A stretch of DNA of 64,000 nt, from the IMG/VR virus record IMGVR_UViG_3300020477_001008, positions 124,001 through 188,000 of that record. One strand, 5' to 3'. This document shows, piece by piece, positions 12,122-60,856 of this stretch. The notes beneath the pieces are model-generated. The model made no database searches. It saw only the letters and a program-made list of their open reading frames with translations, and was not told where the DNA came from. Within the stretch, counting starts at the first letter, position 1. The number at the start of each line of letters is the position of its first letter. The translations under genes were made by a program, and so were the position numbers.

Positions 12122-12165
12122 TACACATACAAATTAGCACATACAAAAATTGCGTAAATACACTT

Positions 12166-30817: not shown

Positions 30818-31816
30818 ATGAATTTACAATCTACAATTTTAGCATTTATTGGTGGTAAACATAAAAAAACACCATCAGGTTGGCACACTATTAATTGTCC
30901 AATGTGTGTAACTCAAGGGCATTCTGCAGACAAAAGAAGACGTGGTGGATTTAAATTCAGCGAAGTTTCAAGCTATCATTGTTTTAATTGTGGATATAAA
31001 GCATCATATACAGCCGGAAGATTAATAGGACGTAAAATGCGTGACTTATTAATTAATATTGGAGTACCAGAAGCAACAGTAAAAGAATTACAATTACTTG
31101 CAATGAAAGAAAAAGACGATAATGTAATTGTTAATAAACAAACCCACTATGCAAATGATTTTGAAGAAAAACAATTACCAAAAAATTCAGTATTATTAAG
31201 TGAAATTATTAAAGGTGCAAATCCACCTGCTAGTGCTTTATTTGTTTACAAATATTTAATGGATAGAGGTTTAGATTTTTATGATAAGTTTTATTGGAGT
31301 TCAGATCCATATATGAAAATTAATGAAAGAGTTATTATACCATTTTATGCTAATGGAAAATTAGTAGGATATACAGCTAGAATTATAAGAAATTATGATA
31401 ATGTACCAAAATATTATTCAGTAGTACAACCTGGATACATTTATAATTTTGATCACTTGTATAAAGATAGAAAATATATTATAATAACAGAAGGTGTGTT
31501 AGATGCACTTGCAATAGATTCAGTAAGTTCTTTAGGAAATAAGCTTACACAAGGACAAATAGATTTAATTAATAGCATTGGCAAAACTGTCATTGTTTGT
31601 CCAGACAGAGATAAGTCTGGAGGAAATTTAATTGATGTTGCTGTTGAAAACAACTGGCTAGTAAGTTTTCCACAATGGGAAAACAATATTAAAGATTGTG
31701 CAGAAGCAGTAAATAATTATGGGAGATTATATACAGTACAGTCTGTAATAAATGGTGCTATAGGTAATATAGCAAAAATTAAAGTTTTGAAAAGAATAGG
31801 AGCCACTAATGGTTAA
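30818..31816 (+). CDS. DNA primase (gp61/DnaG-like)
   Basis: Zn ribbon CPMC...HCFNCG, RVIIPF, TOPRIM ITEGVLDA and PDRD. Confidence 0.92.
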   Translation: MNLQSTILAFIGGKHKKTPSGWHTINCPMCVTQGHSADKRRRGGFKFSEVSSYHCFNCGYKASYTAGRLIGRKMRDLLINIGVPEATVKELQLLAMKEKDDNVIVNKQTHYANDFEEKQLPKNSVLLSEIIKGANPPASALFVYKYLMDRGLDFYDKFYWSSDPYMKINERVIIPFYANGKLVGYTARIIRNYDNVPKYYSVVQPGYIYNFDHLYKDRKYIIITEGVLDALAIDSVSSLGNKLTQGQIDLINSIGKTVIVCPDRDKSGGNLIDVAVENNWLVSFPQWENNIKDCAEAVNNYGRLYTVQSVINGAIGNIAKIKVLKRIGATNG

Positions 31817-32417
31817 AGAAAGTAAGAAAGATAAAGATAAAAACGCACAACCAAAGCAACCACAACAACCAATGCAACCAGGTATGTTAATGTGGGAAGC
31901 TGGAATAATGTATTTCAGTGATGGTTTTGATAGCCAAACAACGAAGCCAGTAATTCAAGCAATTATTGAAAAGAATTTAATGCCAGATTCACAAAGGCCA
32001 AAAGAATTAACGTTGGTGGTTAATTCACCAGGTGGACAAGTACATTCAGCATTTGCATTAATAGACACAATGAAAGGATCAGCAATTCCTGTAAAGACAG
32101 TAGGACTTGGTATGATAGCAAGTTGTGGATTGCTAACTTTTATGAGTGGTCATAAAGGACGTAGGGTTATTACACCAAACACGTCTATATTATCACACCA
32201 ATACAGTTGGGGATCTGGTGGTAAAGAACACGAACTATTTGCAAGAGTAAGAGAGTTTGAATTGAGTACAGCAAGAATGTTAGAACATTATAAAAAATGT
32301 ACAGGTTTAAGCGAAAAGAAAGTTAGAGATATTTTATTACCACCTGAAGACAGATGGTTAAGTGCCAAAGAAGCAGTCAAGTATGGTATTGCAGATAAAA
32401 TTGTATCAACATATTAG
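31809..32417 (+). CDS. clpP: ATP-dependent Clp protease proteolytic subunit ClpP-like
   Basis: VNSPGG, catalytic Ser (IASCG), His (LSHQ), Asp (EDRWLSAKEA.KYGIAD). Confidence 0.9.
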   Translation: MVKESKKDKDKNAQPKQPQQPMQPGMLMWEAGIMYFSDGFDSQTTKPVIQAIIEKNLMPDSQRPKELTLVVNSPGGQVHSAFALIDTMKGSAIPVKTVGLGMIASCGLLTFMSGHKGRRVITPNTSILSHQYSWGSGGKEHELFARVREFELSTARMLEHYKKCTGLSEKKVRDILLPPEDRWLSAKEAVKYGIADKIVSTY

Positions 32418-47293: not shown

Positions 47294-48229
47294 ATGTCAA
47301 CAAGAAATATATGGGGTATAGGACAAGATACATTAAACTTTCCATCTGATACTATTCCAGTATCAAGTATGATGAGTGATACACAAAAGAATTTAATTAA
47401 TAGTGGATTACTTGATCAAGTTGATTTTACGGATCCTTGGGGAAGAAAATCTAAAGCATATCCTGGTTTTCAAAATCCGCATAATGATACTTTAACACAA
47501 ATTGCTAATGGCTGGAATTCAAGATTATCAGTTATGCCAGATGGTTGGAATGATAGCAACTATGCCAATAGAGCAGTTGTTGATGGAAATGCATTAGGTA
47601 ATGGTTTCAGTGCTAGAAAGTTAACTGATACAGAAATTAAAGATATTGGTTTTGTTGAAGGTATATTAAAAGACTTTACATTTTTAACTAATAGACAATC
47701 TGGTATGGACATTATGGAATATGCAAATCCTAATAGTATGTGGTCAGCATTAGGAAATACAGGTACCTATGGTGCTATGGTTGGTTTACCTACCACAGCA
47801 AGTTTTCCAACTGGTATTGTAGTTCCAGGTGTAACAAATTATCTTGGTGTTGCTAGAACTATAAATGAAATTGGACAAATTTTAAATAATGTACCAACAG
47901 GTTATACTTCTGGTCCTTGTAAATGGATAGAAGATATAATGAAAGCTGTAATGAAAGGTGGTTCAATATTAGCAGATATATTGAATAAAGTACTTGACGT
48001 ATTAGGCATCATTGGATTAGTAAACTCAATACTTGGTATGATTAAAATGTTAATGGATATGATACTTGAAGATCTAAGAACATTAGGATCAGCTATTGAA
48101 AGAATGAAGCAGGCGGCTTTATCTGGATTGTTAGAAGCATTAATGAAAGACCCTTGTATGAGATACTTAATTACGGCAGGGTTGGCAGTAGCTGGTACAG
48201 TAGCAATATTAAAAACAACCTCTCTATAA
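47294..48229 (+). CDS. hypothetical protein downstream of PAAR, hydrophobic helical C-terminus
   Basis: 311 aa, SD AGGAGG; long amphipathic/hydrophobic C-terminal helices. Confidence 0.75.
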   Translation: MSTRNIWGIGQDTLNFPSDTIPVSSMMSDTQKNLINSGLLDQVDFTDPWGRKSKAYPGFQNPHNDTLTQIANGWNSRLSVMPDGWNDSNYANRAVVDGNALGNGFSARKLTDTEIKDIGFVEGILKDFTFLTNRQSGMDIMEYANPNSMWSALGNTGTYGAMVGLPTTASFPTGIVVPGVTNYLGVARTINEIGQILNNVPTGYTSGPCKWIEDIMKAVMKGGSILADILNKVLDVLGIIGLVNSILGMIKMLMDMILEDLRTLGSAIERMKQAALSGLLEALMKDPCMRYLITAGLAVAGTVAILKTTSL

Positions 48230-48269
48230 TTTTTTCTTGTTTTTTCTAAAAATTCGTGTATAATTAACA

Positions 48270-48514
48270 GACAACGTTGAAGTTATCGTAATAGATTATA
48301 TGGACGTGGGGGCAGTACCCACCACCTCCACCATTAAGTTAAAAAGTTTTATGGGGGTGAACTAGGATCGACAGTAATTCAAAGGGTAATGGAGTTGTCC
48401 GGATGGAAGCTCGGTTAACGCGACAAACTTATAAATGCAGATGAAAATCTAGCACTTGCGGCCTAATTCGTTAGGCTAACGGGGTCCGGGGCACCTGGCA
48501 ACAGAACGCCCCAC
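48270..48514 (+). ncRNA. ssrA: circularly permuted (two-piece) tmRNA, alphaproteobacterial type
   Basis: Acceptor piece with T-arm GTGGG-GGCAGTA-CCCAC and CACCTCCA-CCA (ends 48333); 19-nt intervening segment; coding piece starts GGGGGTG at 48353 (G3:U70 pair) with GGATCGAC; tag gca gat gaa aat cta gca ctt gcg gcc taa = ADENLALAA (48437-48466); GGCAACAGAA; 5' end approximate. Confidence 0.93.
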
Positions 48515-48521
48515 TTGTATT

Positions 48522-48800
48522 ATGATAAAAAAAATTAAAGAATTTTGGGTAACAAGTTATAAATCAGATCCGTTTGCATTTATTAATGAAATGGCTTCAA
48601 CTATTCTAATAGTTATAGGATCAGCTATTTTAACGTGGACAGTATTAGATCCAAAGCCAGAAATTTTTATTCCTTTTTATTGGGCTGGTAGTATTGCTGG
48701 ATTTATAGGAGCATATCGTAGAACTCTGCCTTGGGTAATGGTATTGACATTTTGGTTTATAATGTTAAATAGTATTGCACTTTGGAGGTTGTTTTTATAA
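48522..48800 (+). CDS. small integral membrane protein
   Basis: Three hydrophobic segments in 92 aa. Confidence 0.7.
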   Translation: MIKKIKEFWVTSYKSDPFAFINEMASTILIVIGSAILTWTVLDPKPEIFIPFYWAGSIAGFIGAYRRTLPWVMVLTFWFIMLNSIALWRLFL

Positions 48801-49180
48801 TGGCAGAAGTACATAAACATTTGATAATCAGAGCTGAAACTAACAAAACACCAACTGATCCAGCTTGGGCTCATCAGTGGTTAACAAAGTTAGTAAAGAA
48901 AATAGGAATGAAAATTTGTCAAGGTCCTATTACTGCTTATGTTAATGTACCTGGCAATAAAGGATTAACAGGTTTAGTAGTTATTGAAACAAGCCATATT
49001 GCTTTGCATTGTTGGGATGAAGATGAGCCAGGATTGTTACAACTTGATGTTTACACTTGTGGACCGTTAGATGAACAAATTATTTTTAATGAACTAAAAC
49101 AATTTGATCCTGTTTGTGTAGAATACAAATACCTTGATAGAAAAAGAAATTTAAAAGAAATAGATGTCAATAAAAAATAA
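48800..49180 (+). CDS. speD: S-adenosylmethionine decarboxylase proenzyme (SpeD/SpeH-like)
   Basis: HLII.AE, GLTGLVVIETSHIALH.W, LDVYTCG; likely start MAEVH at 48800. Confidence 0.88.
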   Translation: MAEVHKHLIIRAETNKTPTDPAWAHQWLTKLVKKIGMKICQGPITAYVNVPGNKGLTGLVVIETSHIALHCWDEDEPGLLQLDVYTCGPLDEQIIFNELKQFDPVCVEYKYLDRKRNLKEIDVNKK

Positions 49181-49568
49181 AATAGACAATTGGGGAAAAC
49201 AATTATCAGTATTAGAAGGTATAGATAGATTACAATATCTAGTTGACCTAGCAGATAAAGAAACTTCATTGGCTAGTGATAAAAGAATAAATGCAAATAT
49301 GATACCTGGATGTGTATCTCAAATTTGGGTAGATGTTAGATTAGAAGATAATAAAGTTATTGCAGATTATGATTCAGATGCAATGATAACAAAAGGAATT
49401 ACAAGTGTAGTATGTGATTGCTTTACAGGTGCTACAAAAGAAGAAGTTAGCAATATAGTTGTAGAAGACTTTGAAAATTTAAATATTAAGCAATTATTAA
49501 CAGCACAACGACAAAATGGTTTAGGAAACCTGATCAATACAGTCATAAACAAGTCCCAGAAGTTATAA
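49164..49568 (+). CDS. sufE: cysteine desulfuration protein SufE
   Basis: DRLQYLVDL, catalytic IPGCVSQIW, DSDAMITKG and R.NGL. Confidence 0.9.
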   Translation: MSIKNKIDNWGKQLSVLEGIDRLQYLVDLADKETSLASDKRINANMIPGCVSQIWVDVRLEDNKVIADYDSDAMITKGITSVVCDCFTGATKEEVSNIVVEDFENLNIKQLLTAQRQNGLGNLINTVINKSQKL

Positions 49569-49607
49569 TAGTAGTTAAGTTTCTATTAACTACCCTTTAA
49601 ATACAAA

Positions 49608-50069
49608 GTGTCAAGCAGTAAGAGAGGCATAACCGCAATCTTCGTAGCATTAATGTTACTCATTGCAACTATACCTTTGAATCTTCATTCCAAGGCTAGT
49701 GCAAGTTCTGACAATTTTATCATAGATTTTAGAATTAATGTTTCGTATGGATTAGGTTGGCGAGTAGATACTCCAGATCCAATGACAATTATACCAGGTA
49801 AAGAATACAAAGTTAATTTAATGGCAGTAAATGATATGGATTCTACTAAAATTGCTGAAATTATGTATGGGTATTTGCCCCCTGAGTTTGCAAGATATTT
49901 TTTATTAGTAGAATGTTTTTGTTATGATACTATTAAATTAAAAGCAAAAAGAATAATTGAATTGCCAGTTGTTTTTATTATTGATCCAGCTATATTAAAA
50001 GATAGAAAATTTAGGAAAGATAAAAATATAACAATAAGATTCAATTTCTACCCACAGATAAAACGTTGA
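49608..50069 (+). CDS. cytochrome c oxidase copper chaperone CtaG/Cox11-like
   Basis: N-terminal TM anchor, Cu-binding ECFCY motif, LPVVFIIDP; GTG start. Confidence 0.72.
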   Translation: MSSSKRGITAIFVALMLLIATIPLNLHSKASASSDNFIIDFRINVSYGLGWRVDTPDPMTIIPGKEYKVNLMAVNDMDSTKIAEIMYGYLPPEFARYFLLVECFCYDTIKLKAKRIIELPVVFIIDPAILKDRKFRKDKNITIRFNFYPQIKR

Positions 50070-50094
50070 CTAAAACATAATTATATCATATAAT
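50066..50094 (+). promoter_or_regulatory. sigma70 promoter of the rnpB-tRNA-Ser transcript
   Basis: TTGACT(50066-71)-N17-TATAAT(50089-94), RNA starting at about 50101. Confidence 0.8.
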
Positions 50095-50100
50095 AGTTTT

Positions 50101-50260
50101 AATGAGTGTAATCGGACTATCGCTGGTAACAGAGGAAAGTCAGGACACAGGTGGATATGTGCAAGTCCAAATAGAGTGTTAACAACCACCGGGACACAGG
50201 GTAGGACGCAAAGGTAGATGATAGTCTAAAACAGAATCCTGCTTACGGATTATACTCATT
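50101..50260 (+). ncRNA. rnpB: minimal RNase P RNA (about 160 nt)
   Basis: P1 AATGAGTGTAATC/GATTATACTCATT; P2 GGACTATC/GATAGTCT; CR-I GAGGAAAGTC; CR-IV TAGATGAT; CR-V AAACAGAATCCTGCTTA; P4 with bulged U and compensatory CAGG/CCTG. Confidence 0.88.
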
Positions 50261-50268
50261 ACTAACCC

Positions 50269-50358
50269 GGAAGGGTGGCTGAGTGGTTGAAAGCACCGGT
50301 CTTGAAAACCGGCAAAGGCGCAAGTCTTTCGTGAGTTCGAATCTCACCCCTTCCGCCA
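50269..50358 (+). tRNA. tRNA-Ser(TGA)
   Basis: Cloverleaf GGAAGGG...CCCTTCC-G-CCA, anticodon arm CCGGT-CTTGAAA-ACCGG, long variable arm, TTCGAAT. Confidence 0.97.
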
Positions 50359-50380
50359 GTTAAATGAAAGAAAAAGAAAA

Positions 50381-50620
50381 ATGGAAGATAATGATACAAA
50401 ATTAAATGATGCTTATAACGTAATTTTTAAGCAAGTAGAGAAATTAACTAAAGATGGAGTAGAGCCTGTTATTATTGCTGGAACATTATTAGCTCAAGCA
50501 CTTAGGTTATACAGAACAGTATTATCAGAACCAGATTTTGAAAAAATGATGGATAGTGTCTTTGGTAGACTTGATGAAATTGAACCATATGGTCCAACTG
50601 ATAAAACTTTGCTTCACTAA
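50381..50620 (+). CDS. hypothetical protein
   Basis: 79 aa helical ORF. Confidence 0.7.
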   Translation: MEDNDTKLNDAYNVIFKQVEKLTKDGVEPVIIAGTLLAQALRLYRTVLSEPDFEKMMDSVFGRLDEIEPYGPTDKTLLH

Positions 50621-50645
50621 ATATGTATAAAATAGAAATAAAAAT

Positions 50646-51005
50646 ATGACCTATTATGTTAATCAAGCCTGTGTAATGTGTAAACACACCGATTGCGTGG
50701 AAGTTTGTCCAGTAGATTGTTTTTACGAAGGTGAAAATTTTTTAGCAATTAATCCAGATGAATGTATAGACTGTGGAGTTTGTGAACCAGAATGCCCAGT
50801 TGATGCAATTAAACCTGACACACACGATGAACCAGACAAAGACAAATGGATAGAAATTAATAAAAAGTATTCAAGTGGACCAAACAGATGGCCAGTATTA
50901 ACAAAAATGATTGAAGCATTAGAAACAGCAGAAGAATATGCAACTAAAACAGATAAAATAAATTTATTATCAGAAAAACCTGGACCAGGAGATGAAGGAC
51001 GATGA
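50646..51005 (+). CDS. fdxA: 7Fe ferredoxin FdxA ([3Fe-4S]/[4Fe-4S])
   Basis: MTYYV...[43 protein letters not shown]. Confidence 0.95.
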
Positions 51006-52042
51006 GTAAAAAGTTTAGTGAGAAGTGGCGAGAAGAAAAAGAAGCTAAAAAGAAAAAGAAATTAGAAAAAGCTGGAGTTAAGCCTGATCCAGAAGTAGGC
51101 AAAAATCTAGATCAAGTAATGAAAAAACAAATTAAAATTGATCTTAACACTCTTAAAGATAGACATTTATTCATTGCCACACCGGCTTATGGTGGTTTAG
51201 TAGGAGAAGCATATTTAAAAGCTATGGTAAGAGTAGGTATATTGTTTAAACAATACAATTTAAACTTTACACTTTGTACAATAGCAAATGAATCATTAAT
51301 AACCAGAGGTAGAAATACACTGACAGCTATGTTTATGAGTGATCCAAAATTTACTGATATGATGTTTATTGATGCTGACATACATTTTGAAGCAGAATCA
51401 GTTATAAAGTTATGGGCTCATATAAGCAATCCAAATTTACCACAATGTGAAGTTGCCATTGGGGCATATCCAAAGAAAACTATTAATTGGGAACAGATTC
51501 ATAAAGCAGTAAGAGCCGGAGCGTCAGTTGATGATATGACTTTACATCAAGGTTCTTATGTAATGAATATTCGTATGGATAATAAAGGAAGAATACCATT
51601 AACAGATGGATTAATTCCTGTATATGATGGTGGAACTGGATTTATGATATTCAAAAGAGAAGTAATACAAACAATGATGGACAAATGGCCTGACTTGCAT
51701 TATAAAAATGATTTAAATACAAACCCTAAACACGATCCATATATGTTTGCTTTATTTGATACTATTATTGATCCTGATACAAGACGTTATTTGTCTGAAG
51801 ATTATACTTTTTGCAGACGTTATCAAGAAATAGGTGGAACAATTTGGATGGATCCTTCTATTAATTTAGATCATCAAGGAAATTATTTGTTTAAAGGTAA
51901 TATTTCTAATCAGTTTACTTACTCAGGTGAAGCAACACAAGAAGAAATGAAAACTATTAATAAAGAGATGGAACTTAATATAGCACCAACACCAAATGAA
52001 CAAAAACCACAAGGTGAATCAAGTGATGAAACAGAACTCTAA
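51002..52042 (+). CDS. GT-A-fold glycosyltransferase-like protein
   Basis: [23 protein letters not shown] (DxD), GTGFM and SEDYTFC..G..IW.D...H.G. Confidence 0.6.
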
Positions 52043-52277
52043 TACTATAAAAACTGAGATTAGTGAATTAAAGAAAGAAGTTAGAGATCAAGCAATAATT
52101 ACTAGAAGAACAATCGTAAAAACATATCAAAAAAATGAAGAAGATAGTTTAAGAAGTAAAGTAGCAAGGCAAGAAAAGAAATTAAAGCAAGAACAATACT
52201 TACGTAGAAAATATCCATCGGTAAATGAAGCATACAAACATTATTTGATGACAATGAAGTTAGTAAAATCAAAATAA
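51996..52277 (+). CDS. hypothetical basic coiled-coil protein
   Basis: RRKYPSVNEAYKHY; true start probably 52026 (MKQN). Confidence 0.6.
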   Translation: MNKNHKVNQVMKQNSNTIKTEISELKKEVRDQAIITRRTIVKTYQKNEEDSLRSKVARQEKKLKQEQYLRRKYPSVNEAYKHYLMTMKLVKSK

Positions 52278-52637
52278 ATGACAAATTGGCATAACGTAAA
52301 CGACCTTTATATAGTTTGTAATAAAAAAATAGCAAACGTACCAAAGAAGAAAGCAACAATTGATTGGGTTGGAATAGATTGTGTATATAAAATTAAAATT
52401 AATAACAAAGTAGTACACGTTGGTAGGTCTGATACTTGTAAGAAACACGGTGGTGCCGAAAAAACTAGAAAAGCTTTAGTTCAATTAATGGGTTGGGAAA
52501 CAAAAAACCCTGGAATTACAACAACAAAGCTTTGGGAAAGCATTAAAAAAACCTATAAACCAAAAATTGGCGATATTAAAATTGGAATTATAGCGACAAA
52601 CAACATAGAAAAAGTGTATAATAAAGAAGCAATATGA
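52278..52637 (+). CDS. hypothetical protein, possibly GIY-YIG-like
   Basis: CVYKI...HVGRS resembles a degenerate GIY-YIG motif. Confidence 0.4.
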   Translation: MTNWHNVNDLYIVCNKKIANVPKKKATIDWVGIDCVYKIKINNKVVHVGRSDTCKKHGGAEKTRKALVQLMGWETKNPGITTTKLWESIKKTYKPKIGDIKIGIIATNNIEKVYNKEAI

Positions 52638-53038
52638 TATTTAGAAGTAACAAAGATCACTTATTACACGAAGTTTTTAAAGGCTTAAATACTTTTGTAG
52701 AGAAAACTATGTTTAAGCAATACGAAAACGATACCCTAAAATCATTAGAATACCTAACTACAAAAACAGGCGAATTAAAACTAGAATATAAAGAATTAAT
52801 GGCTTGTTGGAAATGGTATAACATTGATCGTCCTAAAAGAGAAGCTAAAAATGATTTAGGCAATAGTATGATGTACTATGAGCAAGATACAAAAATGTTA
52901 GCAAGGGCGGTAGCATTAAGAAAATTTTCACAAAAACTTTTTAAAGGAGGAGATTATGAACCAAGAATCGGGACTTTTCAAGCGACACGCAAATCTGTCA
53001 CAAAAGGTAGAAATGTTGGAAAAGGAGAGACAGCATAA
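52634..53038 (+). CDS. hypothetical protein
   Basis: 134 aa; 3' end overlaps a 59-aa ORF. Confidence 0.6.
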   Translation: MIFRSNKDHLLHEVFKGLNTFVEKTMFKQYENDTLKSLEYLTTKTGELKLEYKELMACWKWYNIDRPKREAKNDLGNSMMYYEQDTKMLARAVALRKFSQKLFKGGDYEPRIGTFQATRKSVTKGRNVGKGETA

Positions 53039-53135
53039 TAGAACTTTTCAGCATAAAGCTGAACTACTACAACTTAAAAAAGAAAAATTGAAAATAAAAG
53101 AACAAATAGAAAGATTAAAAACAAGAACAAATTAG
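52956..53135 (+). CDS. YdcH/DUF465-like small coiled-coil protein (not in the ORF track)
   Basis: SD AAGGAGG; MNQESGLFKRHANLSQKVEMLEKER...ELLQLKKEKLKIKEQIERL; stop abuts the next ATG. Confidence 0.7.
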   Translation: MNQESGLFKRHANLSQKVEMLEKERQHNRTFQHKAELLQLKKEKLKIKEQIERLKTRTN

Positions 53136-53136
53136 T

Positions 53137-53562
53137 ATGTACGAATATAGATGTAAAATATTAAAAATCATTGACGGGGATACTGTTGATGTTGATATAG
53201 ATTTAGGTTTTGGAGTATGGATGCACAAGGAACGTGTTAGATTGTTTGGCATTGATACTCCTGAGTCTAGGACTAGAGATAAAGAAGAAAAGAAATACGG
53301 TTTACTATCCAAAAAATTTATACAAGAAAGATATCCAGTAGGATCAAATGCAATATTAATAACGCATAAAGACGCAACTGGAAAGTTTGGACGTATATTG
53401 GGTGAGCTAAAATATAATAATACTACAATTAATAAGAAAATGATACTTGAAGGTTATGCAGTTGCTTATCACGGACAATCAAAAGAAGATGTTGAAGCAG
53501 AACATTTAAAAAATAGAAAAAAGTTGGATAAAAAAATAAGCAAATTTACTAAAGTAAAATGA
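53137..53562 (+). CDS. thermonuclease (SNase-like)
   Basis: IIDGDTVDV.IDLGF, RVRLFGIDTPESRT, GKFGRILG and GYAV.Y.G. Confidence 0.92.
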   Translation: MYEYRCKILKIIDGDTVDVDIDLGFGVWMHKERVRLFGIDTPESRTRDKEEKKYGLLSKKFIQERYPVGSNAILITHKDATGKFGRILGELKYNNTTINKKMILEGYAVAYHGQSKEDVEAEHLKNRKKLDKKISKFTKVK

Positions 53563-53795
53563 GATTAGATCTTCACGGATTTACAGTACACGATGCTTGG
53601 AAAAAATTTAGTGTATGGATTCAAGACGCACAAACAAAGGAAAATGTTAAATCTGTTACAATAGTAACAGGCCAAGGAGAAATCCATAAAGAACTTCCTC
53701 GATGGTGTGATAATATGAATTTTATTAGACAAATACAACCACACTTTCATAATGGTGCTTACCAAATTTATTTTTACAAAAACAGACGTGAATAG
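53559..53795 (+). CDS. stand-alone Smr-domain protein (putative mRNA endonuclease)
   Basis: LDLHG (DxH) and IVTGQG (GxG) Smr signature motifs; 78 aa. Confidence 0.82.
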   Translation: MRLDLHGFTVHDAWKKFSVWIQDAQTKENVKSVTIVTGQGEIHKELPRWCDNMNFIRQIQPHFHNGAYQIYFYKNRRE

Positions 53796-53796
53796 A

Positions 53797-53825
53797 TTGA
53801 CAAAAATTGGATTGTATAGTATATT
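53797..53825 (+). promoter_or_regulatory. sigma70 promoter of queD
   Basis: TTGACA(53797-802)-N17-TATATT(53820-25). Confidence 0.75.
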
Positions 53826-53831
53826 AAACAA

Positions 53832-53882
53832 TGAGGACTTAACGTCAACCCTCTTTAAAAATTCTGCCGTCAATATAAGGAG
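53832..53882 (+). ncRNA. candidate preQ1-I riboswitch
   Basis: GAGG...ACCCTC stem followed by an A-rich TTTAAAAA tail at the predicted +1, upstream of queD; loop CTTA can pair with TAAG of the SD region. Confidence 0.5.
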
Positions 53883-53887
53883 AAAAT

Positions 53888-54352
53888 ATGGGTAAACATT
53901 TTAGTACAAAACATTACGGACATAATATTGGGTTGAGTGCAGTTTTTAGACAACCAAACGCAGACCATTCACATTGTCATTTTTTACACGGATATAGTTT
54001 AGCATTTACATTTACATTTGGTTGTGATGAGTTAGATAATAAAAATTGGGCAGTTGATTTTGGAGGACTAAAACCTTTAAAAAAATGGCTTGAAGACTCA
54101 TTTGATCATAAACTTTGCTTGGATAAAAACGATCCACATCTAGAAAAATTTAAAGAATTAGAAGCAATGGATCTTGCACAGATTAGAATTTTTGATGGTG
54201 TTGGAGCAGAAAAATTTGCCGAACACGCCTTTAATTTTGCAGATAATTTAATTAAAGAAGCAACAAATAATCGTTGTTATGTAGTAAAAGTAGAATGTGC
54301 AGAACACGGAGCCAATTCGGCAATATATCAAATAACTGAAAAAAACCTATAA
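53888..54352 (+). CDS. queD: 6-carboxy-5,6,7,8-tetrahydropterin synthase QueD
   Basis: FRQ..AD.SHC.FLHGY, W.VDFGGLK, FDHK, GAEKFAE and ECAEHGANSAIY. Confidence 0.9.
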   Translation: MGKHFSTKHYGHNIGLSAVFRQPNADHSHCHFLHGYSLAFTFTFGCDELDNKNWAVDFGGLKPLKKWLEDSFDHKLCLDKNDPHLEKFKELEAMDLAQIRIFDGVGAEKFAEHAFNFADNLIKEATNNRCYVVKVECAEHGANSAIYQITEKNL

Positions 54353-54360
54353 ATAGTTAT

Positions 54361-56058
54361 ATGTTATTAACTTTGCTAACATTATTGTCAGCATTATCTA
54401 TAAGTGCGGTAGCGATCTTCTATTCTATAGCAGGTCTGGCCGCGATATTTGCCGGTGCGGCTGTTCCTATTATGATAATGGGTACTGTTTTAGAAGTAGG
54501 TAAATTAGTTACCGCTTCTTGGCTATATCAGAATTGGAAGAAGTCACCATTCTTTTTAAAGTTCTATCTCACGATCGCAGTAGTAGTTTTAATGTTTATA
54601 ACGTCTATGGGTATCTTTGGTTTCTTATCTAAAGCACACGTAGAACAAACAGCACCGTCGACACTTATTACACAAAAGATAGAACAGATAGATGAAAGAC
54701 TAGTTCGTGAAAATGCTAAAGTAGAAAGATTTACATTAGATTTAGAAAGATTAAACACAGGTACTAACGTAAGAATAGATACATTAGTAGATACAGAACA
54801 AGGCAAATTAGATTCAATTTATTCACGTATTGATAAAGAGATTGCTGATATTACAGCAATTGCTAATACAAGTATTAATACGCAAAAAGAAAGAATAACT
54901 CAAGCTAAAGAAAGAGCTGATAGAGATATTGCACAATTAAATGAAGCTAGAGCAAAAACTTGGGGTAAGAAAAGAATTGATGATGAAATAGCAAAGATTA
55001 GAGATAATGAATTAGCTGTGGCGGCCGCGGCACAAAAAGAAATAATAAAAATACAAGAAAAATTAAATGTTGATATACAAGCTATTAAAGACAAATATCA
55101 AGCTAGTATTGATGCTATTACAACCAATGTAACAAAGTTAACAGGCGAAGCTGAAGCTACAACAGGTGAAATAGAAGTCAAAGCAGATGAACTTGAAGGA
55201 AAACTTACAGTTGTATATGCTAATATTGATGATTTAAATGAAGAAAAATTTGTACTACAATCACAAATTAAAGAGATAGAAGTTGAAGTAGGACCAATAA
55301 AATACATAGCAGAATTTGTATATGGTATGGAAGCAGATGCTGATCTATTAGAAAAATCAGTTAGATGGGTTATTATTATAATTATATTTGTATTTGATCC
55401 ACTTGCAGTATTATTATTGATTGCGGCAAACTTCTCTTTAAAAAGAAGATTTGGTAGTGATATGGAAGAAATGGTTGAAGCCAAATTTGGTGGCGGAAAA
55501 TTAGATGACTATTGGAAAGATAGATATCAAGATATGAAAGAAGATCTTTCAAGATTTAATAAACAAAAAGAACACCAAGATACTACACAAGAAGAACATT
55601 CAGTTAGTGCCTCATATAATTTAGGTGAAGTTAATGTTGATAATACTGATCAATCAGTTGAAGATTATTTAGATGAAGTACAATATGATATAGATCCTAA
55701 AGAATTTGAAGGTGTAGAAGAAAACGATTTAGGTCATCCAAATTATGATTTAATTAAAGATGAAGAAACAGGTAAAAAGAAATATTGGGAAGACCAAAAT
55801 AAAGAAGAACAGCTAGAAAGATTTAAACAGCGAGAAGAAGAAGAAAAACAAGCACTAGAAGAATATTCACGTAAAGCTAGGGAAGAAGATGGCTTTGATC
55901 CAGATGAAGTTGAAGGATATGAAGAATTTAATAAAAATTACGAGAATAAAGAAGATGACGAATCAGTTAGTATTGCTGAAGATGAAGTAACGCCAACTAT
56001 AATTGAAGATGTTAAGATTACAGATCTATCCGATGAGGATGTTAAAAAAAAGACTTAA
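54361..56058 (+). CDS. membrane protein with long periplasmic coiled coil and acidic tail
   Basis: N-terminal TMs (SIAGLAAIFAG..., GIFGFLSKAH), coiled coil, VGPIKY, IIFVFDPLAVLLLIAAN; ends just after A_AAA_AAG. Confidence 0.8.
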   Translation: MLLTLLTLLSALSISAVAIFYSIAGLAAIFAGAAVPIMIMGTVLEVGKLVTASWLYQNWKKSPFFLKFYLTIAVVVLMFITSMGIFGFLSKAHVEQTAPSTLITQKIEQIDERLVRENAKVERFTLDLERLNTGTNVRIDTLVDTEQGKLDSIYSRIDKEIADITAIANTSINTQKERITQAKERADRDIAQLNEARAKTWGKKRIDDEIAKIRDNELAVAAAAQKEIIKIQEKLNVDIQAIKDKYQASIDAITTNVTKLTGEAEATTGEIEVKADELEGKLTVVYANIDDLNEEKFVLQSQIKEIEVEVGPIKYIAEFVYGMEADADLLEKSVRWVIIIIIFVFDPLAVLLLIAANFSLKRRFGSDMEEMVEAKFGGGKLDDYWKDRYQDMKEDLSRFNKQKEHQDTTQEEHSVSASYNLGEVNVDNTDQSVEDYLDEVQYDIDPKEFEGVEENDLGHPNYDLIKDEETGKKKYWEDQNKEEQLERFKQREEEEKQALEEYSRKAREEDGFDPDEVEGYEEFNKNYENKEDDESVSIAEDEVTPTIIEDVKITDLSDEDVKKKT

Positions 56059-56264
56059 AAACCAGGAAAGAGAGAATAAAAAAAATTGACATCAACGATG
56101 AAATTAGTGTACAATTAAAAGAAGTAAAAAAAACTATTGATATGGAAGGCATTAATCAAAGAACTCAAAAAACACTGGCACTCAATCACGGAGCAAAAGG
56201 TGAGACAGTAATATCCAAGGCTGACAAAGAATGGTTAGATCAGAAATCAGATAATAATAAATGA
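56046..56264 (+). other. -1 frame extension of the 54361 gene (72 open codons) or small ORF 56142..56264
   Basis: Frame open from 56046 to TGA 56262-64, overlapping the clpX ATG. Confidence 0.45.
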
Positions 56265-57553
56265 GCGATAAAGAGATTAAAATGAAATGCTCGTTCTGTG
56301 AAAAGACTAGAGCCGAATCACATAAATTAATAGCAGGACCTAAAGAAACATTTATTTGCGATGAATGTGTAAAACTTTGCCACGATATTTTAAAAGAAGG
56401 AACAATTGAAAACGAAACAAAAGAGTTTGCTATTCCTGATCCAAAAAAATTACACGGATATTTAAATGAACACGTAATTGGTCAAGATAGAGCAAAGAAA
56501 ATTGTTAGTGTAGCAGTTTATAACCATTATAAAAGAATTGTTAATAATTTAATTAAAGAAGATGGGCAAGACGAAATTGAAAAATCTAATGTTATGATGT
56601 TAGGACCATCAGGTGTTGGAAAAACACTTTTAGCTAAAAAGGTTGCTGAATACGTAAATGTACCATTTGCTATTGCTGATGCAACAACAATAACAGAATC
56701 AGGTTATGTAGGTGATGACGTAGAGAATATTGTAACAAGATTATTGCAACAAGCAGACTTTAATGTTGAAAAAGCTGAACGTGGAATTATATACATTGAT
56801 GAAATAGATAAAAAAGCAAAAAAAGGTGAGAACGTATCAATTACTAGAGATGTATCTGGTGAAGGTGTACAACAAGCTTTATTAAAAATTATTGAAGGAA
56901 CAACTGTTAGAGTTCCGCCACAAGGTGGAAGAAAACATCCTGGTGCAGAAATGATTGAAGTTGATACATCAAATATATTGTTTATAGTTGGTGGAGCATT
57001 TGTTGGTATAGATAAAGTTATTAATAAAAGGGCTAATAAGTCAGCAGGTATTGGATTTAATCAACGAGTAGAAACTGTTGATACAGGATTTGATGAATGC
57101 GAACCAGATGATTTAATTAAGTATGGATTAATACCTGAACTTGTTGGAAGGTTACCAGTTATAGTAGGTTGTCATAATTTAGATAAAAAAGATTTAAAAG
57201 CAATTATGCTTGATGTAAAAAATTCATTGATTAAACAATCTCAACGTTTATTTAAAATGGAAAATGTAAATTTAATTATAACTGAAGATGCAGTAGATTA
57301 TGTAGTAGATGAAGCACACGAAAAGAAATTAGGTGCTAGAGGATTAAAATCTGTGTTAGAAAAAGGTTTATTAGAAATACAATATGACTTACCAGAATAC
57401 AGAGATGGTGGAGTTAGTGAAATTACAGTTACAGAAAAAACGCTCAAAGGAGAAAAACCGATGCTCACTTATGAGTTTGATGCTAAAGATATAAAAGCTA
57501 AAGAAACAAAAAAAGGGAAAAAGGAAGATAACGGTACAACAGGAAAAGAATGA
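56261..57553 (+). CDS. clpX: ATP-dependent Clp protease ATP-binding subunit ClpX
   Basis: Zn domain CSFC...ICDEC; Walker A GPSGVGKT; pore loop GYVG; IDEIDK; RDVSGEGVQ; RKH loop; IGF loop (AGIGF). Confidence 0.97.
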
Positions 57554-58104
57554 AACAAAGATATAGTAATTACGAGTATCAAAAAAAGAAAGCATTAATT
57601 AACGAGAATATTAGAAGTAAAGAAGTTCGTTTAATATTAGAATCATCACAAGAAATAGTAACTACACAAGAAGCATTAAGATTATCTAGAGAGCAAGATT
57701 TAGATCTAGTTTGTGTTAGCACAAAATCAAATCCACCTATATGTAAAATTATGGATTATGGGAAACATCTATATGAACAAAAAAAGAAACAAAAAATTGC
57801 TGATAAAAAACAAAGAGAAGCTATTGTGGATACAAAAGAAATCCAGTTTAGACCAGCAACTGGAATTGGAGATCTTAAAGTAAAAGCTAAAAAGGTACAA
57901 GAGTTTATAGATGATGGAGATAAGGTAAAATTAGTAATGAAATTGCGTGGCAGGGAAAATGCTATGAAGGATTTTGCTATGGAACAATTCAAAAAATTTG
58001 TTGATTTAATTGAGAATTATGACTACGATTATAGGCCAAATATACAGGGAAATAAAATACTTGCAATTTTAAAGAAAGGTGTTATAATAAAGAACAATGA
58101 GTGA
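57550..58104 (+). CDS. infC: translation initiation factor IF3
   Basis: INENIR..EVRLI, DLDLV.VS....[28 protein letters not shown]....RGRE. Confidence 0.95.
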
Positions 58105-58453
58105 TAAACCAAGGAAAAAATACGACATCAAAAATTTCTCTAATTTTGGGAAATTTGAGCAAAAGCGAGATCGAAGACCAAGACGTGAGCCAGATCCACC
58201 TGGTTTAGCAGTTACAGTTCACGGCGACGATGTAATGAAAGCTTATAGAAGGCTTAAAAAGAAACTAATGAAAGATAACCTTATGGATACAATAAGGGAT
58301 AAAAGATATTACAAAAAGCCAAGTGAAATTAGACAAGAAAAATTAAAAGTGCAAAGAAGGAATATGCAAAAAGCTCAAAGAGATAGAGCTATGCAATATG
58401 GTATAAGATATAAAAACTATGATCCTAGCACAGCCAAAACACGTGGCTATTAA
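58097..58453 (+). CDS. rpsU: 30S ribosomal protein bS21 with N- and C-terminal extensions
   Basis: VTVHGDDVMKAYRRLKKKL...RYYKKPSE.R core; own promoter TTGCAA-N16-TGn-TATAAT-N8-ATG. Confidence 0.85.
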   Translation: MSDKPRKKYDIKNFSNFGKFEQKRDRRPRREPDPPGLAVTVHGDDVMKAYRRLKKKLMKDNLMDTIRDKRYYKKPSEIRQEKLKVQRRNMQKAQRDRAMQYGIRYKNYDPSTAKTRGY

Positions 58454-58934: not shown

Positions 58935-59010
58935 GGGCGGTTAGCTCAGTTGGTAGAGCATCTCGTTTACACCGAGGGGGTCAAAGGTTCGAGTCCTTTA
59001 CTGCCCACCA
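58935..59010 (+). tRNA. tRNA-Val(TAC)
   Basis: GGGCGGT...ACTGCCC-A-CCA; anticodon loop TTTACAC; TTCGAGT. Confidence 0.97.
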
Positions 59011-59014
59011 TTAC

Positions 59015-59090
59015 GGAGTATTAGTGTAGCGGTTAACACGTCGCCCTGTCACGGCGAAGACCACGGGTTCGAATCCCGTATACTCCGCCA
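59015..59090 (+). tRNA. tRNA-Asp(GTC)
   Basis: GGAGTAT...ATACTCC-G-CCA; anticodon arm TCGCC-CTGTCAC-GGCGA. Confidence 0.97.
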
Positions 59091-60385: not shown

Positions 60386-60856
60386 ATGTCAGAAGATGAA
60401 GTAAAAAAAGCTGAAGAAACAAAGGCAGAAGAAAAGCCAGTAGAACCAAAAGCTGAAGAAACATCTAAAACTATTACAAGAAATTTAGATGCTATTGTTG
60501 AAGAACTTGGACAATTAACAGTTATGGAAGCGGCCGATCTTGCTAAAAAATTAGCTAAAGCTTGGGATATTGATTTAGATAATATGGCGGCCGGTGTTGC
60601 ACCAGCAGGTGGTGGCGCCGCGGGAGCTCCAGCAGACGCAGATGCTCCTGTAACAGTTATATTAAAAGATTTTAAAGAAGGTACTAAAATTAATGTCTTA
60701 AAAGCAATTAAGGCAATTAAAGGTTTAGGACTAATGGAATCTAAACAATTTGTAGAAGCATTACCTAAAGAAGTTGATTCAGAAATACCAAGAGATAAAG
60801 CAGAAGAAATTAAAAAACAATTGGAAGAAGTTGGCGGTAACGTTGAAATAAAATAA
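60386..60856 (+). CDS. rplL: 50S ribosomal protein bL12 (L7/L12) with N-terminal extension
   Basis: [16 protein letters not shown], Ala/Gly hinge, [34 protein letters not shown]. Confidence 0.95.

What the first reader, a model, noticed from the sequence alone, without database searches (positions are those of the whole stretch)
48270..57553. Phage-encoded ribosome-rescue pathway: Smr nuclease, two-piece tmRNA and ClpXP
Seen: a stand-alone Smr protein with intact DLH/GxG motifs (53559), a permuted tmRNA with tag ADENLALAA (48270-48514), a ClpX with RKH, GYVG and IGF loops (56261) and a ClpP with an intact Ser-His-Asp triad (31809, upstream of this span). Established: SmrB-type proteins cut mRNA at collided ribosomes, tmRNA rescues the resulting non-stop complexes, and C-terminal LAA tags are read by ClpX and degraded by ClpP. 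Inference: the phage carries its own cut-tag-degrade quality-control line. It could recycle ribosomes stalled on truncated host mRNAs, or on phage mRNAs stalled by anti-tRNA defences, and might use a private tag/ClpX pair. SmpB is not in this window, so it would come from the host or from elsewhere in the genome.
Basis: partly seen in the sequence, partly recalled or inferred. Interest (0 to 1): 0.92.

Follow-up and report, generated by a model that had tools for sequence, protein, structure and literature searches.

The report
Phage translation and protein-quality-control gene kit
A giant marine phage, probably of SAR11 bacteria, carries its own tmRNA, ClpX, ClpP, chaperones, an initiation factor and four ribosomal proteins; tagging and degrading stalled proteins is plausible, but the small Smr nuclease shows no sign of feeding that route.

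Summary
There is a permuted alpha-type tmRNA (48221-48515, tag ADENLALAA), a 78-aa SMR-only protein (53559-53795), a bona fide ClpX (56261-57553) and a ClpP-family peptidase with an intact triad (31809-32417).

- The 31809 'ClpP' is a divergent paralogue. It lacks the N-terminal hairpin and the aromatic ClpX-docking pocket.
- A canonical ClpP (59% identical to E. coli ClpP) lies on the same contig, about 8.7 kb beyond the window. ClpS, DnaK and an sHSP lie near it.
- The Smr lacks the whole SmrB N-terminal ribosome hook. Published work shows that SMR-only SmrB does not bind ribosomes.
- Smr is not linked to the tmRNA outside the window's own clade.

Across 80 phage clpX loci the conserved neighbourhood is membrane protein-clpX-infC-sHSP-clpS. 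The tmRNA appears in 10, Smr in 18 and SmpB in none. No smpB was found in about 63% of the 242.6 kb contig.

The tag (…LAA) and the ClpX loops (RKH, GYVG, IGF) are canonical, so there is no 'private' pair.

Best reading: this is a broad translation and proteostasis support kit in a jumbo T4-like phage. tmRNA-to-ClpXP is a plausible biochemical axis that depends on host SmpB, and Smr is unassigned. Each component is already known from phages.

The parts
48221..48515 (+). Two-piece (permuted) alpha-type tmRNA gene. Sub-features: -10-like TATAAT 48259-48264, T-arm 48306-48322, 3' acceptor strand plus ACCA 48323-48333, 5' acceptor strand 48353-48359, tag ORF ADENLALAA plus stop 48437-48466
   Evidence: Rfam RF01849 152.8 bits and RF04321 125.6 bits; ARAGORN; sequence; covariation in 9 phage tmRNAs with G3-U70 invariant
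50269..50358 (+). tRNA-Ser(UGA)
   Evidence: conserved position in relatives L002, L004, L005, L006 and L008
53137..53562 (+). Staphylococcal-nuclease-type endonuclease. Its stop overlaps the Smr start by 4 nt
   Evidence: Pfam SNase 57.4 bits; phrog_452 endonuclease; ORF coordinates
53559..53795 (+). Stand-alone SMR-domain protein (78 aa) with DLH and TGQG motifs and no N-terminal extension
54361..56058 (+). Uncharacterised membrane/coiled-coil protein (3 TM, coiled coil, TM, acidic tail). Directly upstream of clpX in 77 of 80 phage loci
56086..56115 (+). Near-consensus sigma-70-like site (TTGACA-18-TACAAT) in the gap upstream of clpX. A consensus match only
56261..57553 (+). clpX: AAA+ unfoldase with C4 zinc finger, GYVG, RKH and IGF loops
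   Evidence: NF003745 551 against 359
57550..58104 (+). infC (IF3). Its start overlaps the clpX stop. The adjacency is conserved in 56 of 80 loci and in phages Atu_ph07 and Phosso
   Evidence: TIGR00168 152 against 60
58097..58453 (+). rpsU (bS21) with a ~38-aa N-terminal extension. Overlaps the infC stop
   Evidence: Pfam 42.3 against 27; TIGR00030 44.7 against 28.95
58935..59090 (+). tRNA-Val(UAC) and tRNA-Asp(GUC)
60386..60856 (+). rplL (bL12)
   Evidence: TIGR00855 99.6 against 84.4
31809..32417 (+). Divergent ClpP-family serine peptidase ('ClpP1'). The triad is intact but the ClpX-docking features are absent. A core gene of the lineage, sitting between primase and thyX
1472..1897 (-). rplK (uL11)
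   Evidence: Pfam on the called gene; TIGR01632 202 against 142

Best explanation
The span belongs to the auxiliary-gene region of a jumbo T4-like myophage. The IMG/VR contig is 242.6 kb, and a 311 kb assembly also exists. GC is 32%, and the DnaK is closest to SAR11. The phage carries a broad kit that props up host translation and protein quality control: a two-piece tmRNA, at least 7 tRNAs, IF3, bS21, bL12, uL11, bL33, ClpX, a canonical ClpP, ClpS, DnaK and an sHSP.

Proposed mechanism. Shown by sequence: the tmRNA has its own -10-like box, an intact tRNA-like domain with the alanine identity pair G3-U70, an encoded CCA end, and a tag ORF ending in LAA. Inferred: host RNases process it into two pieces, host AlaRS charges it, and host SmpB and EF-Tu deliver it to non-stop ribosomes, which are freed while the nascent chain receives ADENLALAA. 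The C-terminal LAA is then read by ClpX (phage or host; the RKH and GYVG loops are canonical), and the chain is degraded in canonical ClpP. The likely ClpP is the phage copy 16 kb downstream of clpX or the host's, not the 31809 paralogue. Phage ClpS would steer ClpAP away from ssrA substrates. The clpX-infC-rpsU genes overlap and probably form one transcription unit.

tmRNA-to-ClpXP is thus a biochemical consequence of carrying both genes, not a dedicated conserved module. The Smr is a minimal SMR nuclease with an unassigned substrate and is not demonstrably part of this axis.
For: Component identities. The canonical ClpP2 is on the same contig (L372, 100% identity). It is 59% identical to E. 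coli ClpP, keeps the N-terminal hairpin, and has 10 of 11 pocket positions hydrophobic or aromatic. NF001368 scores 329.8 against 249. L366 is 99.94-99.98% identical to the window and L001 where they overlap. ClpX and ClpP2 share a contig in at least 11 IMG/VR contigs. The conserved cluster around clpX is: membrane protein 77/80, infC adjacent 56/80, sHSP 71/75, ClpS 72/75. The clpX-infC adjacency is also present in Atu_ph07 and Phosso. tmRNA covariation. ClpX loops are conserved in 83 phage homologues. SmpB is absent from 2.29 Mb of related loci, from 120 tmRNA loci and from about 153 kb of this contig. Among deposited phages SmpB appears only at prophage edges or in Lak-type huge phages. DnaK is 76-79% identical to Pelagibacteraceae DnaK. 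Literature: two-piece tmRNA in marine myophages (PMC9004378); tmRNA, SmpB, IF3 and S21 in huge phages (PMC7162821); ClpX, ClpP and IF3 in jumbo phages (PMC7824862); phage G carries ssrA (PMC4131195) and a ClpX homologue.
Against: No expression, processing, charging or degradation data exist. About 37% of the 242.6 kb contig, and more of the 311 kb assembly, was not inspected, so a phage smpB or other rescue factors could lie there. Whether host SmpB and AlaRS accept the phage tmRNA is inferred. ClpP2 narrowly misses the TIGR00493 equivalog cutoff (303 against 308.6), and pocket position L189 is Glu. The overall count of promoter-like sites is not above the shuffled expectation (51 against 59.9), so the transcription-unit boundaries are only suggested. 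The conserved clpX-infC coupling itself is unexplained.
Confidence: 0.6

Rival explanations
1. One reading: a dedicated three-step line in which the phage Smr cuts mRNA at collided ribosomes, the phage tmRNA rescues the resulting non-stop complexes, and phage ClpXP degrades the tagged chains.
For: The SMR fold is complete, with DxH and GxG intact and invariant in 11 family members. All bacterial SMR clades discussed by Saito et al. are tied to ribosome collisions. Those authors also report that the SMR domain contacts S21 and that S21-SMR operons exist in bacteria. The window's clade is the only one with bS21 near clpX, and all 8 such loci also carry Smr. A second Smr subgroup carries a basic ~30-aa C-terminal tail that could act as an RNA or ribosome anchor.
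Against: There is no N-terminal hook, and SMR-only SmrB does not bind ribosomes. The SmrB equivalog scores 21 against 128. Outside the window's clade, the 7 tmRNA-bearing clpX loci have no Smr and the 10 Smr-bearing loci have no tmRNA. No Smr lies near 120 other phage tmRNAs. The Smr's position and strand vary. Smr overlaps an SNase gene, and a near-consensus promoter-like site separates it from the downstream genes.
Confidence: 0.15
2. For the Smr part only: SNase and Smr act as general nucleases on host DNA or RNA, for nucleotide scavenging or host shut-off, with no connection to ribosome rescue.
For: The Smr start overlaps the SNase stop. The two are adjacent in L003, L004 and L008. SNase, thyX and RNR are the usual neighbours of phage tmRNAs and of this region, giving a nucleotide-metabolism context. 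The SMR domain was first characterised as a DNA-nicking endonuclease in MutS2 and N4BP2 (own knowledge), and the closest sequence matches in the PDB are N4BP2 SMR domains, though weakly (E about 0.1).
Against: L002 has Smr without SNase, and in L005-L007 the two are 1.5-2.5 kb apart. Current evidence favours RNA and ribosome roles for bacterial SMR proteins. No substrate data exist.
Confidence: 0.3
3. The tmRNA and ClpX serve separate, non-quality-control ends. The tmRNA would be used to mark host proteins for amino-acid recycling or to sense and titrate the host rescue machinery. ClpX would act mainly as a remodeller or degrader of specific regulators, or together with the conserved membrane protein and IF3.
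For: Buchholz et al. proposed selective tagging of host proteins for recycling. Al-Shayeb et al. mention a role for tmRNA in sensing host state. A TLD-only phage tmRNA (DS6A) is suggested to titrate SmpB. The most conserved partners of clpX are the membrane protein and infC, not the tmRNA. Iyer et al. and the Atu_ph07 authors suggested assembly or replication roles for phage ClpX.
Against: The full coding piece with a canonical degradation tag is conserved. ClpX keeps the IGF loop in all 83 homologues and the RKH loop in 63, so it looks like a proteolytic, ssrA-competent enzyme. A canonical ClpP co-occurs with it.
Confidence: 0.15

Closest known systems
Two-piece tmRNA (ssrA) of marine myophages: Melnitz, Mosig and the pelagimyophages (Buchholz et al. 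2022, PMC9004378)
   Same: A permuted alpha-type tmRNA in a T4-like marine phage of a streamlined host. No phage SmpB. It lies in a nucleotide-metabolism and auxiliary-gene region, and expression looks promoter-proximal.
   Different: No glutamine riboswitch was detected here. The tag is short at 9 residues. The genome is a jumbo phage (243-311 kb) that also encodes ClpX, ClpP, ClpS, DnaK, an sHSP, IF3 and four ribosomal proteins.
Translation genes of huge phages (Al-Shayeb et al. 2020, PMC7162821)
   Same: tmRNA, IF3, bS21, bL12 and tRNAs are encoded by phages above 200 kb and are interpreted as redirecting or maintaining host translation.
   Different: Those phages can carry SmpB with the tmRNA. 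None was found here in 63% of the contig. Clp proteins are not discussed in that paper (0 occurrences).
Clp genes of jumbo phages Atu_ph07 and Phosso (PMC6102473; Iyer et al. 2021, PMC7824862)
   Same: clpX is immediately followed by infC on the same strand. ClpS and ClpP-family genes are present. Phosso has a 59% identical homologue of the divergent ClpP1.
   Different: The cultured relatives lack the upstream membrane protein, and no tmRNA or Smr was seen near their clpX. Their hosts are soil rhizobia.
E. coli SmrB / tmRNA-SmpB / ClpXP rescue pathway (Saito et al., bioRxiv 10.1101/2021.08.16.456513)
   Same: Homologues or analogues exist for the SMR catalytic domain (DxH, GxG), the tmRNA with an LAA-ended tag, and ClpX and ClpP.
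   Different: The phage Smr lacks the N-terminal uS2 hook needed for ribosome binding. No SmpB is encoded near any component. The genes are not co-inherited across relatives.

Membership tests
Two-piece (permuted) alphaproteobacterial tmRNA (Rfam RF01849 / RF04321) | Covariance-model score above the gathering threshold | tested here: met
   152.8 against 50 and 125.6 against 47
Two-piece (permuted) alphaproteobacterial tmRNA (Rfam RF01849 / RF04321) | Permuted order: acceptor piece (T-arm, 3' strand, CCA) upstream of the coding piece (5' strand, tag ORF) | tested here: met
   Sequence at 48306-48333, then 48353-48466
Two-piece (permuted) alphaproteobacterial tmRNA (Rfam RF01849 / RF04321) | Acceptor stem with G3-U70 (AlaRS identity) and a T-arm, maintained by compensatory change | tested here: met
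   108/108 cells paired in 9 phage tmRNAs, 6 of 12 pairs with changes on both sides, G-U invariant
Two-piece (permuted) alphaproteobacterial tmRNA (Rfam RF01849 / RF04321) | Tag reading frame starting at an Ala resume codon and ending in hydrophobic-Ala-Ala plus a stop | tested here: met
   GCA...GCG GCC TAA at 48437-48466. Relatives' tags end in LAA, MAA or IAA
Two-piece (permuted) alphaproteobacterial tmRNA (Rfam RF01849 / RF04321) | Processing into two pieces, alanylation and SmpB-dependent ribosome entry | not testable with these tools
   Needs northern blots, charging assays and tagging assays
ClpX | Full-length equivalog score; C4 zinc finger; Walker A/B; pore-1 GYVG; RKH loop; IGF ClpP-docking loop | tested here: met
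   NF003745 551 against 359 and TIGR00382 529 against 371; motifs
Canonical ClpP (ClpX/ClpA partner): gene at 31809-32417 | Ser-His-Asp triad | tested here: met
   Aligned to S97, H122 and D171; invariant in 84 homologues
Canonical ClpP (ClpX/ClpA partner): gene at 31809-32417 | Curated ClpP family score | tested here: not met
   Best is 101.8 against 228; TIGR00493 is 74.7 against 308.6
Canonical ClpP (ClpX/ClpA partner): gene at 31809-32417 | N-terminal axial hairpin and helix A, and a hydrophobic/aromatic IGF-docking pocket (E. coli Y60, Y62, F82, I90, M92, F112, L114, L189) | tested here: not met
   Hairpin and helix A cannot be aligned. Y60T, Y62V, F82G and L114T are conserved across the family. 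The residue list comes from own knowledge of the E. coli ClpP literature
Canonical ClpP: second gene, L366:16998-17585 (same contig, outside the window) | Family score, triad, N-terminal hairpin, docking pocket | tested here: met
   NF001368 329.8 against 249 (TIGR00493 303 against 308.6, a narrow miss); 59% identical to E. coli ClpP; hairpin motif present; 10 of 11 pocket positions hydrophobic or aromatic; on the window's contig
SmrB (proteobacterial collision endonuclease) | SMR catalytic domain with DxH and GxG | tested here: met
   Pfam 33.8 against 25.7; motifs invariant; fold TM 0.81 to the MutS2 SMR domain
SmrB (proteobacterial collision endonuclease) | N-terminal extension whose conserved helix hooks uS2 and is needed for ribosome binding | tested here: not met
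   All 15 aligned phage Smr proteins begin at LDLHG. The requirement is described
SmrB (proteobacterial collision endonuclease) | Equivalog score | tested here: not met
   21.3 against 128; only profile positions 97-146 of 181 are matched
SmrB (proteobacterial collision endonuclease) | Collision-dependent mRNA cleavage | not testable with these tools
   Needs a reporter or in vitro disome assay
IF3 (infC), bS21, bL12, uL11, bL33 | NCBIfam equivalog score | tested here: met
   152 against 60; 44.7 against 29; 99.6 against 84.4; 202 against 142; 27.1 against 24
SmpB | Any homologue encoded by the phage | tested here: inconclusive
   None in the window, in 37+ kb downstream and 38 kb upstream (about 63% of the contig), in 80 clpX loci or in 120 tmRNA loci. 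The rest of the genome was not read

The most novel reading that the evidence does not exclude
The hook-less phage Smr is nonetheless a ribosome-collision nuclease, and it is recruited through phage-supplied ribosomal parts. The phage bS21, with its N-terminal extension, replaces host bS21, which the SMR domain contacts in the E. coli disome. Ribosomes remodelled by the phage would then acquire their own cut-tag-degrade line (Smr, then phage tmRNA, then phage ClpX with canonical ClpP2). This would help a jumbo phage keep a small SAR11 ribosome pool turning over, or survive RNA-targeting defences.
Probability: 0.12. Interest if true: 0.8.

Novelty: new member of a known kind. Interest (0 to 1): 0.45.

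Why it matters
If the tmRNA-to-ClpXP axis works as proposed, this would be one of the most complete virus-encoded translation and proteostasis kits in a phage of the ocean's most abundant and most genome-streamlined bacteria. It combines tmRNA, ClpX, ClpP, ClpS, DnaK, an sHSP, IF3 and four ribosomal proteins. That would suggest large phages make up for the limited ribosome-rescue and protein-quality-control capacity of such hosts. The widely conserved but undescribed cluster (membrane protein-clpX-infC-sHSP-clpS) and the phage-specific SMR-only family can both be tested in laboratory systems. The specific three-enzyme 'pathway' claim should not be propagated as an annotation.

Tried and rejected
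- Near-identity DNA search of the span against deposited phages found nothing.
- PHROGs has no family for the Smr.
- I considered that the 31809 ClpP-like gene is the head-maturation protease, because its best PHROG is of that kind. I rejected this: the genome has a gp21-type Peptidase_S77 in the portal-scaffold-gp23 module, the ClpP-like gene sits among replication genes, and in Phosso it sits next to MutT and IF-1.
- I tried to show that two large contigs carrying ClpP1 (328 kb and 306 kb; L112, L157) lack clpX.
- The first contig-walk look-up failed because the ORF I chose was not the called gene.
- The promoter scan gives three 11/12 sites in intergenic gaps, but the overall count does not exceed that in shuffled sequence, so I treat it only as a hint.
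- The conserved upstream membrane protein has no Pfam, NCBIfam, PHROG or PDB relative despite at least 8,000 homologues.
- A profile of the Smr family against PDB sequences gives only weak N4BP2 hits (E about 0.1).
The phage-versus-host tag comparison was therefore not done.

Full report
WHAT THE WINDOW IS. The window lies on IMG/VR contig IMGVR_UViG_3300020477_001008, which is JGI Ga0211585_10000044 (242,646 bp). Window position 1 is about contig position 124,001. A 311,421 bp assembly of the same phage also exists. The phage is a T4-like myovirus: sheath, tail tube, T4-type terminase, gp32-like, UvsX/RecA-like, RNR, ThyX and DnaB-type helicase lie in the window, and gp23, the gp20 portal, gp13, gp15 and a gp21-type prohead protease lie just upstream. 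By terminase, the nearest named phages are PA5oct-like Pseudomonas jumbo phages and Sinorhizobium phage Phosso, at about 53%. No deposited phage shares near-identical DNA with the span. GC content is 31.9%. The phage DnaK is 76-79% identical to Pelagibacteraceae DnaK (the top 22 hits) and 71-75% identical to DnaK of other Alphaproteobacteria. A SAR11 host is therefore likely, though this is inference.

OBSERVATION CHECK.
- The tmRNA is called by ARAGORN and by two Rfam models at about three times their gathering scores.
- The tRNA-like domain can be read directly: T-arm 48306-48322, 3' acceptor strand plus ACCA 48323-48333, 5' acceptor strand 48353-48359, and tag ORF 48437-48466 encoding ADENLALAA.
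- I aligned it with eight other phage tmRNAs found upstream of clpX homologues. The 12 acceptor and T-stem pairs are paired in 108 of 108 cells, six pairs change on both sides, and the G3-U70 alanine identity pair never varies. This is a functional gene under selection, not an attachment-site remnant.
- The Smr ORF (78 aa) passes the Pfam cutoff and has DLH and TGQG. It folds with pLDDT 90 into a complete SMR domain that superposes on the MutS2 SMR domain (TM 0.81, rmsd 1.6 Å).
- ClpX passes two equivalog models by a wide margin and has the zinc finger, GYVG, RKH and IGF.
- The 31809 gene matches Pfam CLP_protease and aligns Ser, His and Asp with the E. coli triad.

THE 31809 'ClpP' IS NOT THE CLPX PARTNER; A CANONICAL ClpP LIES JUST OUTSIDE THE WINDOW.
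- The 31809 protein fails every NCBIfam ClpP cutoff (best 101.8 against 228).
- Across 84 homologues the triad is invariant. The positions that form the IGF-loop docking pocket in E. coli ClpP are consistently replaced (Y60T, Y62V, F82G, L114T), and the N-terminal hairpin and helix A cannot be aligned.
- It is a slowly evolving core gene of the lineage: 370 IMG/VR contigs carry it, and the 80 best are at least 72% identical. It sits between primase and thyX.
- It is not the head-maturation protease, because a gp21-type Peptidase_S77 occupies the canonical place between portal and gp23. Its function remains unknown.
- Walking the contig with exact-protein look-ups used DNA that is 99.94-99.98% identical to the window where the two overlap. 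Downstream of clpX this revealed infC, rpsU, two tRNAs, a SufS-like gene, rplL, SufBD, an aldehyde dehydrogenase, a hydroxylase, a porin, an sHSP, DnaK, MotA/ExbB, ClpS, SbmA, NifU and a second ClpP of 195 aa.
- That second protein is 59% identical to E. coli ClpP. It keeps the N-terminal hairpin and 10 of 11 pocket positions, and scores 329.8 against 249 on NF001368.
- It is on the window's own IMG/VR contig at 196,706-197,290 (L372, 100% identity). That is about 16.4 kb downstream of clpX and about 8.7 kb beyond the window end.
- ClpX and this ClpP share a contig in at least 11 IMG/VR contigs (compare).

WHAT IS ACTUALLY LINKED TO WHAT. I collected 80 phage loci around clpX homologues (45-100% identity, up to ±10 kb) and tallied their neighbours.
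- An uncharacterised membrane/coiled-coil protein lies directly upstream in 77 of 80.
- infC lies directly downstream in 56 of 80.
- An IbpA-like sHSP is present in 71 of the 75 loci with at least 3 kb of downstream sequence, and ClpS in 72 of those 75.
- DnaK occurs in 8 and bS21 in 8.
- A permuted tmRNA occurs in 10 of the 64 loci with at least 8 kb of upstream sequence.
- Smr occurs in 18 of 80, and in 10 of those it is on the opposite strand.
- SmpB occurs in none.
- The clpX-infC adjacency is also found in the cultured jumbo phages Atu_ph07 and Phosso.
- tmRNA and Smr coincide only in the window's own clade (L001, L002, L004). Elsewhere, seven tmRNA-bearing loci have no Smr and ten Smr-bearing loci have no tmRNA.
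- In an independent sample anchored on the tmRNA signature (more than 120 viral contigs, 1.03 Mb), the neighbours are thyX (22), SNase (16) and RNR (10). There is no clpX, Smr or SmpB.
- In a further subgroup the Smr gene lies near the divergent ClpP1 and carries a basic C-terminal tail.
- Limitation: these are neighbourhood statistics on fragments of at most 10 kb per side, not whole-genome profiles. In L005-L008 the tmRNA could lie just beyond the fetched DNA.

THE SPAN ITSELF. The 9 kb between the tmRNA and clpX holds SpeD, SufE, CtaG/Cox11, tRNA-Ser, a ferredoxin, several unknown ORFs, SNase, Smr, a QueD-like protein and the membrane protein. This is a typical mixed auxiliary-gene stretch. 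The Smr start overlaps the SNase stop. Near-consensus sigma-70-like sites lie between Smr and queD (53797-53825) and about 145 nt upstream of clpX (56086-56115). However, the total count of such sites is not above the shuffled expectation. The clpX, infC and rpsU reading frames overlap one another, which suggests one unit.

THE SMR. All aligned phage Smr proteins start at the LDLHG motif. The ~95 N-terminal residues of E. coli SmrB are absent, and the SmrB equivalog scores 21 against 128. Saito et al. report that this extension forms a hook around uS2 and that SmrB(88-183), the SMR domain alone, does not bind ribosomes. They also note that the SMR domain contacts S21 and that S21 and SMR genes are operon-linked in several bacteria. 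The catalytic potential is therefore intact, but the known recruitment device is missing. The bS21 observation leaves a speculative alternative recruitment route, which I give as the novel case. A role with the adjacent SNase in nucleic-acid breakdown is about equally defensible. I do not assign a substrate.

SMPB. tblastn with E. coli SmpB detects phage and bacterial relatives down to 34% identity in the phage collection. Those hits are prophage edges and Lak-type or other huge phages, not marine myophages or rhizobial jumbo phages. The same query finds nothing in the window, in 162 related loci (2.29 Mb), in 120 tmRNA loci or in the walked DNA. No called gene between contig positions ~86,000 and ~238,900 carries the SmpB Pfam family. 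That covers about 63% of the 242.6 kb contig, and the remainder is unread. Host supply of SmpB is the most economical reading, as proposed for other marine phage tmRNAs.

'PRIVATE' TAG/CLPX PAIR. This idea is not supported. The tag ends in LAA, and relatives' tags end in LAA, MAA or IAA. The ClpX RKH and GYVG loops are canonical here, with RKH in 63 of 83 phage homologues and GYVG in all 83, and all 83 keep an (I/M)GF loop. From established ClpX biochemistry (own knowledge), the RKH loops and the pore recognise the C-terminal LAA-COO-. Phage and host enzymes should therefore read each other's tags.

WHAT IS KNOWN.
- Two-piece tmRNAs in marine myophages, and speculation about their use, are published (PMC9004378).
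- tmRNA with SmpB, IF3, bS21 and bL12 in huge phages are published (PMC7162821).
- ClpX, ClpP, ClpS and IF3 in jumbo phages are published, with consecutive accessions for the ClpX and IF3 of Atu_ph07, but the adjacency goes unremarked (PMC7824862, PMC6102473).
- Phage G carries ssrA and a ClpX homologue.
- DnaK and sHSP occur in another jumbo lineage (PMC12619734).
- I found no paper describing the membrane protein-clpX-infC-sHSP-clpS cluster or a phage SMR-only family. One marine jumbo-phage survey discarded bins with more than one ribosomal protein (PMC9123017), which would have removed phages like this one.

VERDICT. The tag-and-degrade half is plausible, and the canonical ClpP found outside the window strengthens it. 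The 'cut' half and the idea of a dedicated, co-inherited pathway are not supported. The region is best described as part of a large translation and proteostasis support kit of a probable SAR11 jumbo phage. Novelty: a new member of a known kind. Interest is moderate at 0.45, resting mainly on the completeness of the kit, the likely host, and two undescribed but testable items: the conserved clpX cluster and the hook-less Smr.

Noticed in passing
window 18165-20686 (+): An AdoCbl-II (cobalamin) riboswitch (85 bits against 36.5) lies upstream of a small ORF and a BtuB-like TonB-dependent receptor with plug and barrel domains. The TonB-B12 model scores 228 bits, below its 600 cutoff. This looks like a phage-borne, riboswitch-controlled outer-membrane vitamin B12 receptor.
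   Followed up: partly
window 1472-1897 (-), 58097-58453 (+), 60386-60856 (+); L454:6323-6526: Four ribosomal protein genes pass NCBIfam equivalog cutoffs: uL11, bS21 (with a ~38-aa N-terminal extension), bL12 (with a ~32-aa N-terminal extension) and bL33. The bL33 gene sits between the portal and the prohead protease genes. uL11 and bL12 together form the GTPase-associated stalk.
   Followed up: partly
window 54361-56058 (+): A 565-aa protein with three N-terminal TM helices, a long coiled coil, a further TM helix and an acidic tail. Residues 1-365 are conserved directly upstream of clpX in 77 of 80 phage loci. At least 8,000 metagenomic homologues exist, all unannotated, with no Pfam, NCBIfam, PHROG or PDB relative.
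   Followed up: partly
L366:10001-17585 (same contig, 8-17 kb past clpX, beyond the window end): A proteostasis set: an IbpA-like sHSP, a full-length DnaK (NF001413 1052 against 648), ClpS and a canonical ClpP. In most related phages the sHSP and ClpS follow clpX-infC directly. In this clade, inserted genes have pushed them apart.
   Followed up: yes
window 10802-13290, 45793-46998; L368/L371/L453 (contig about 198-220 kb); L457: At least 15 radical-SAM/SPASM genes, including a near-continuous array of at least 11. The same genome also carries many Fe-S supply genes: SufE 49164-49568, SufS-like 59109-60314, SufBD 60856-62280, NifU, an FeS-assembly protein and a ferredoxin at 50646-51005.
   Followed up: no
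L366:10538-12427 against L458-L479: The phage DnaK is closest to Pelagibacteraceae DnaK (76-79%). With 31.9% GC and an alpha-type tmRNA, this points to a 243-311 kb jumbo phage of SAR11, far larger than the cultured pelagimyophages of about 140-150 kb (sizes partly and partly own knowledge).
   Followed up: partly
window 31809-32417; L081-L160: The divergent ClpP-family peptidase has an intact triad but no ClpX-docking features. It is a highly conserved core gene: 370 IMG/VR contigs carry it, and Phosso has a 59% identical homologue next to MutT and IF-1. Its function is unknown and it is not the prohead protease.
   Followed up: partly
L141, L146-L148, L153, L157, L160 (about 4.6 kb upstream of the ClpP1 homologue): A second subgroup of phage SMR-only proteins (106 aa) carries a ~30-residue basic C-terminal tail. 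These genes lie near ClpP1 rather than near clpX.
   Followed up: no
window 48782-50069: Unusual auxiliary genes lie between the tmRNA and tRNA-Ser: an S-adenosylmethionine decarboxylase (SpeD-type), SufE and the cytochrome c oxidase assembly protein CtaG/Cox11. Elsewhere on the contig are a porin, MotA/ExbB, SbmA/BacA, Fe-SOD, a fatty-acid desaturase and an APS kinase.
   Followed up: no
alignment A2 (window 48238-48557 and eight relatives): The segment between the acceptor and coding pieces of the phage tmRNAs varies from about 19 nt in the window's clade to about 100 nt in L029 and L040, while the flanking stems are conserved. A TATAAT-like box is conserved about 10-40 nt upstream of the tRNA-like part in all nine.
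   Followed up: no
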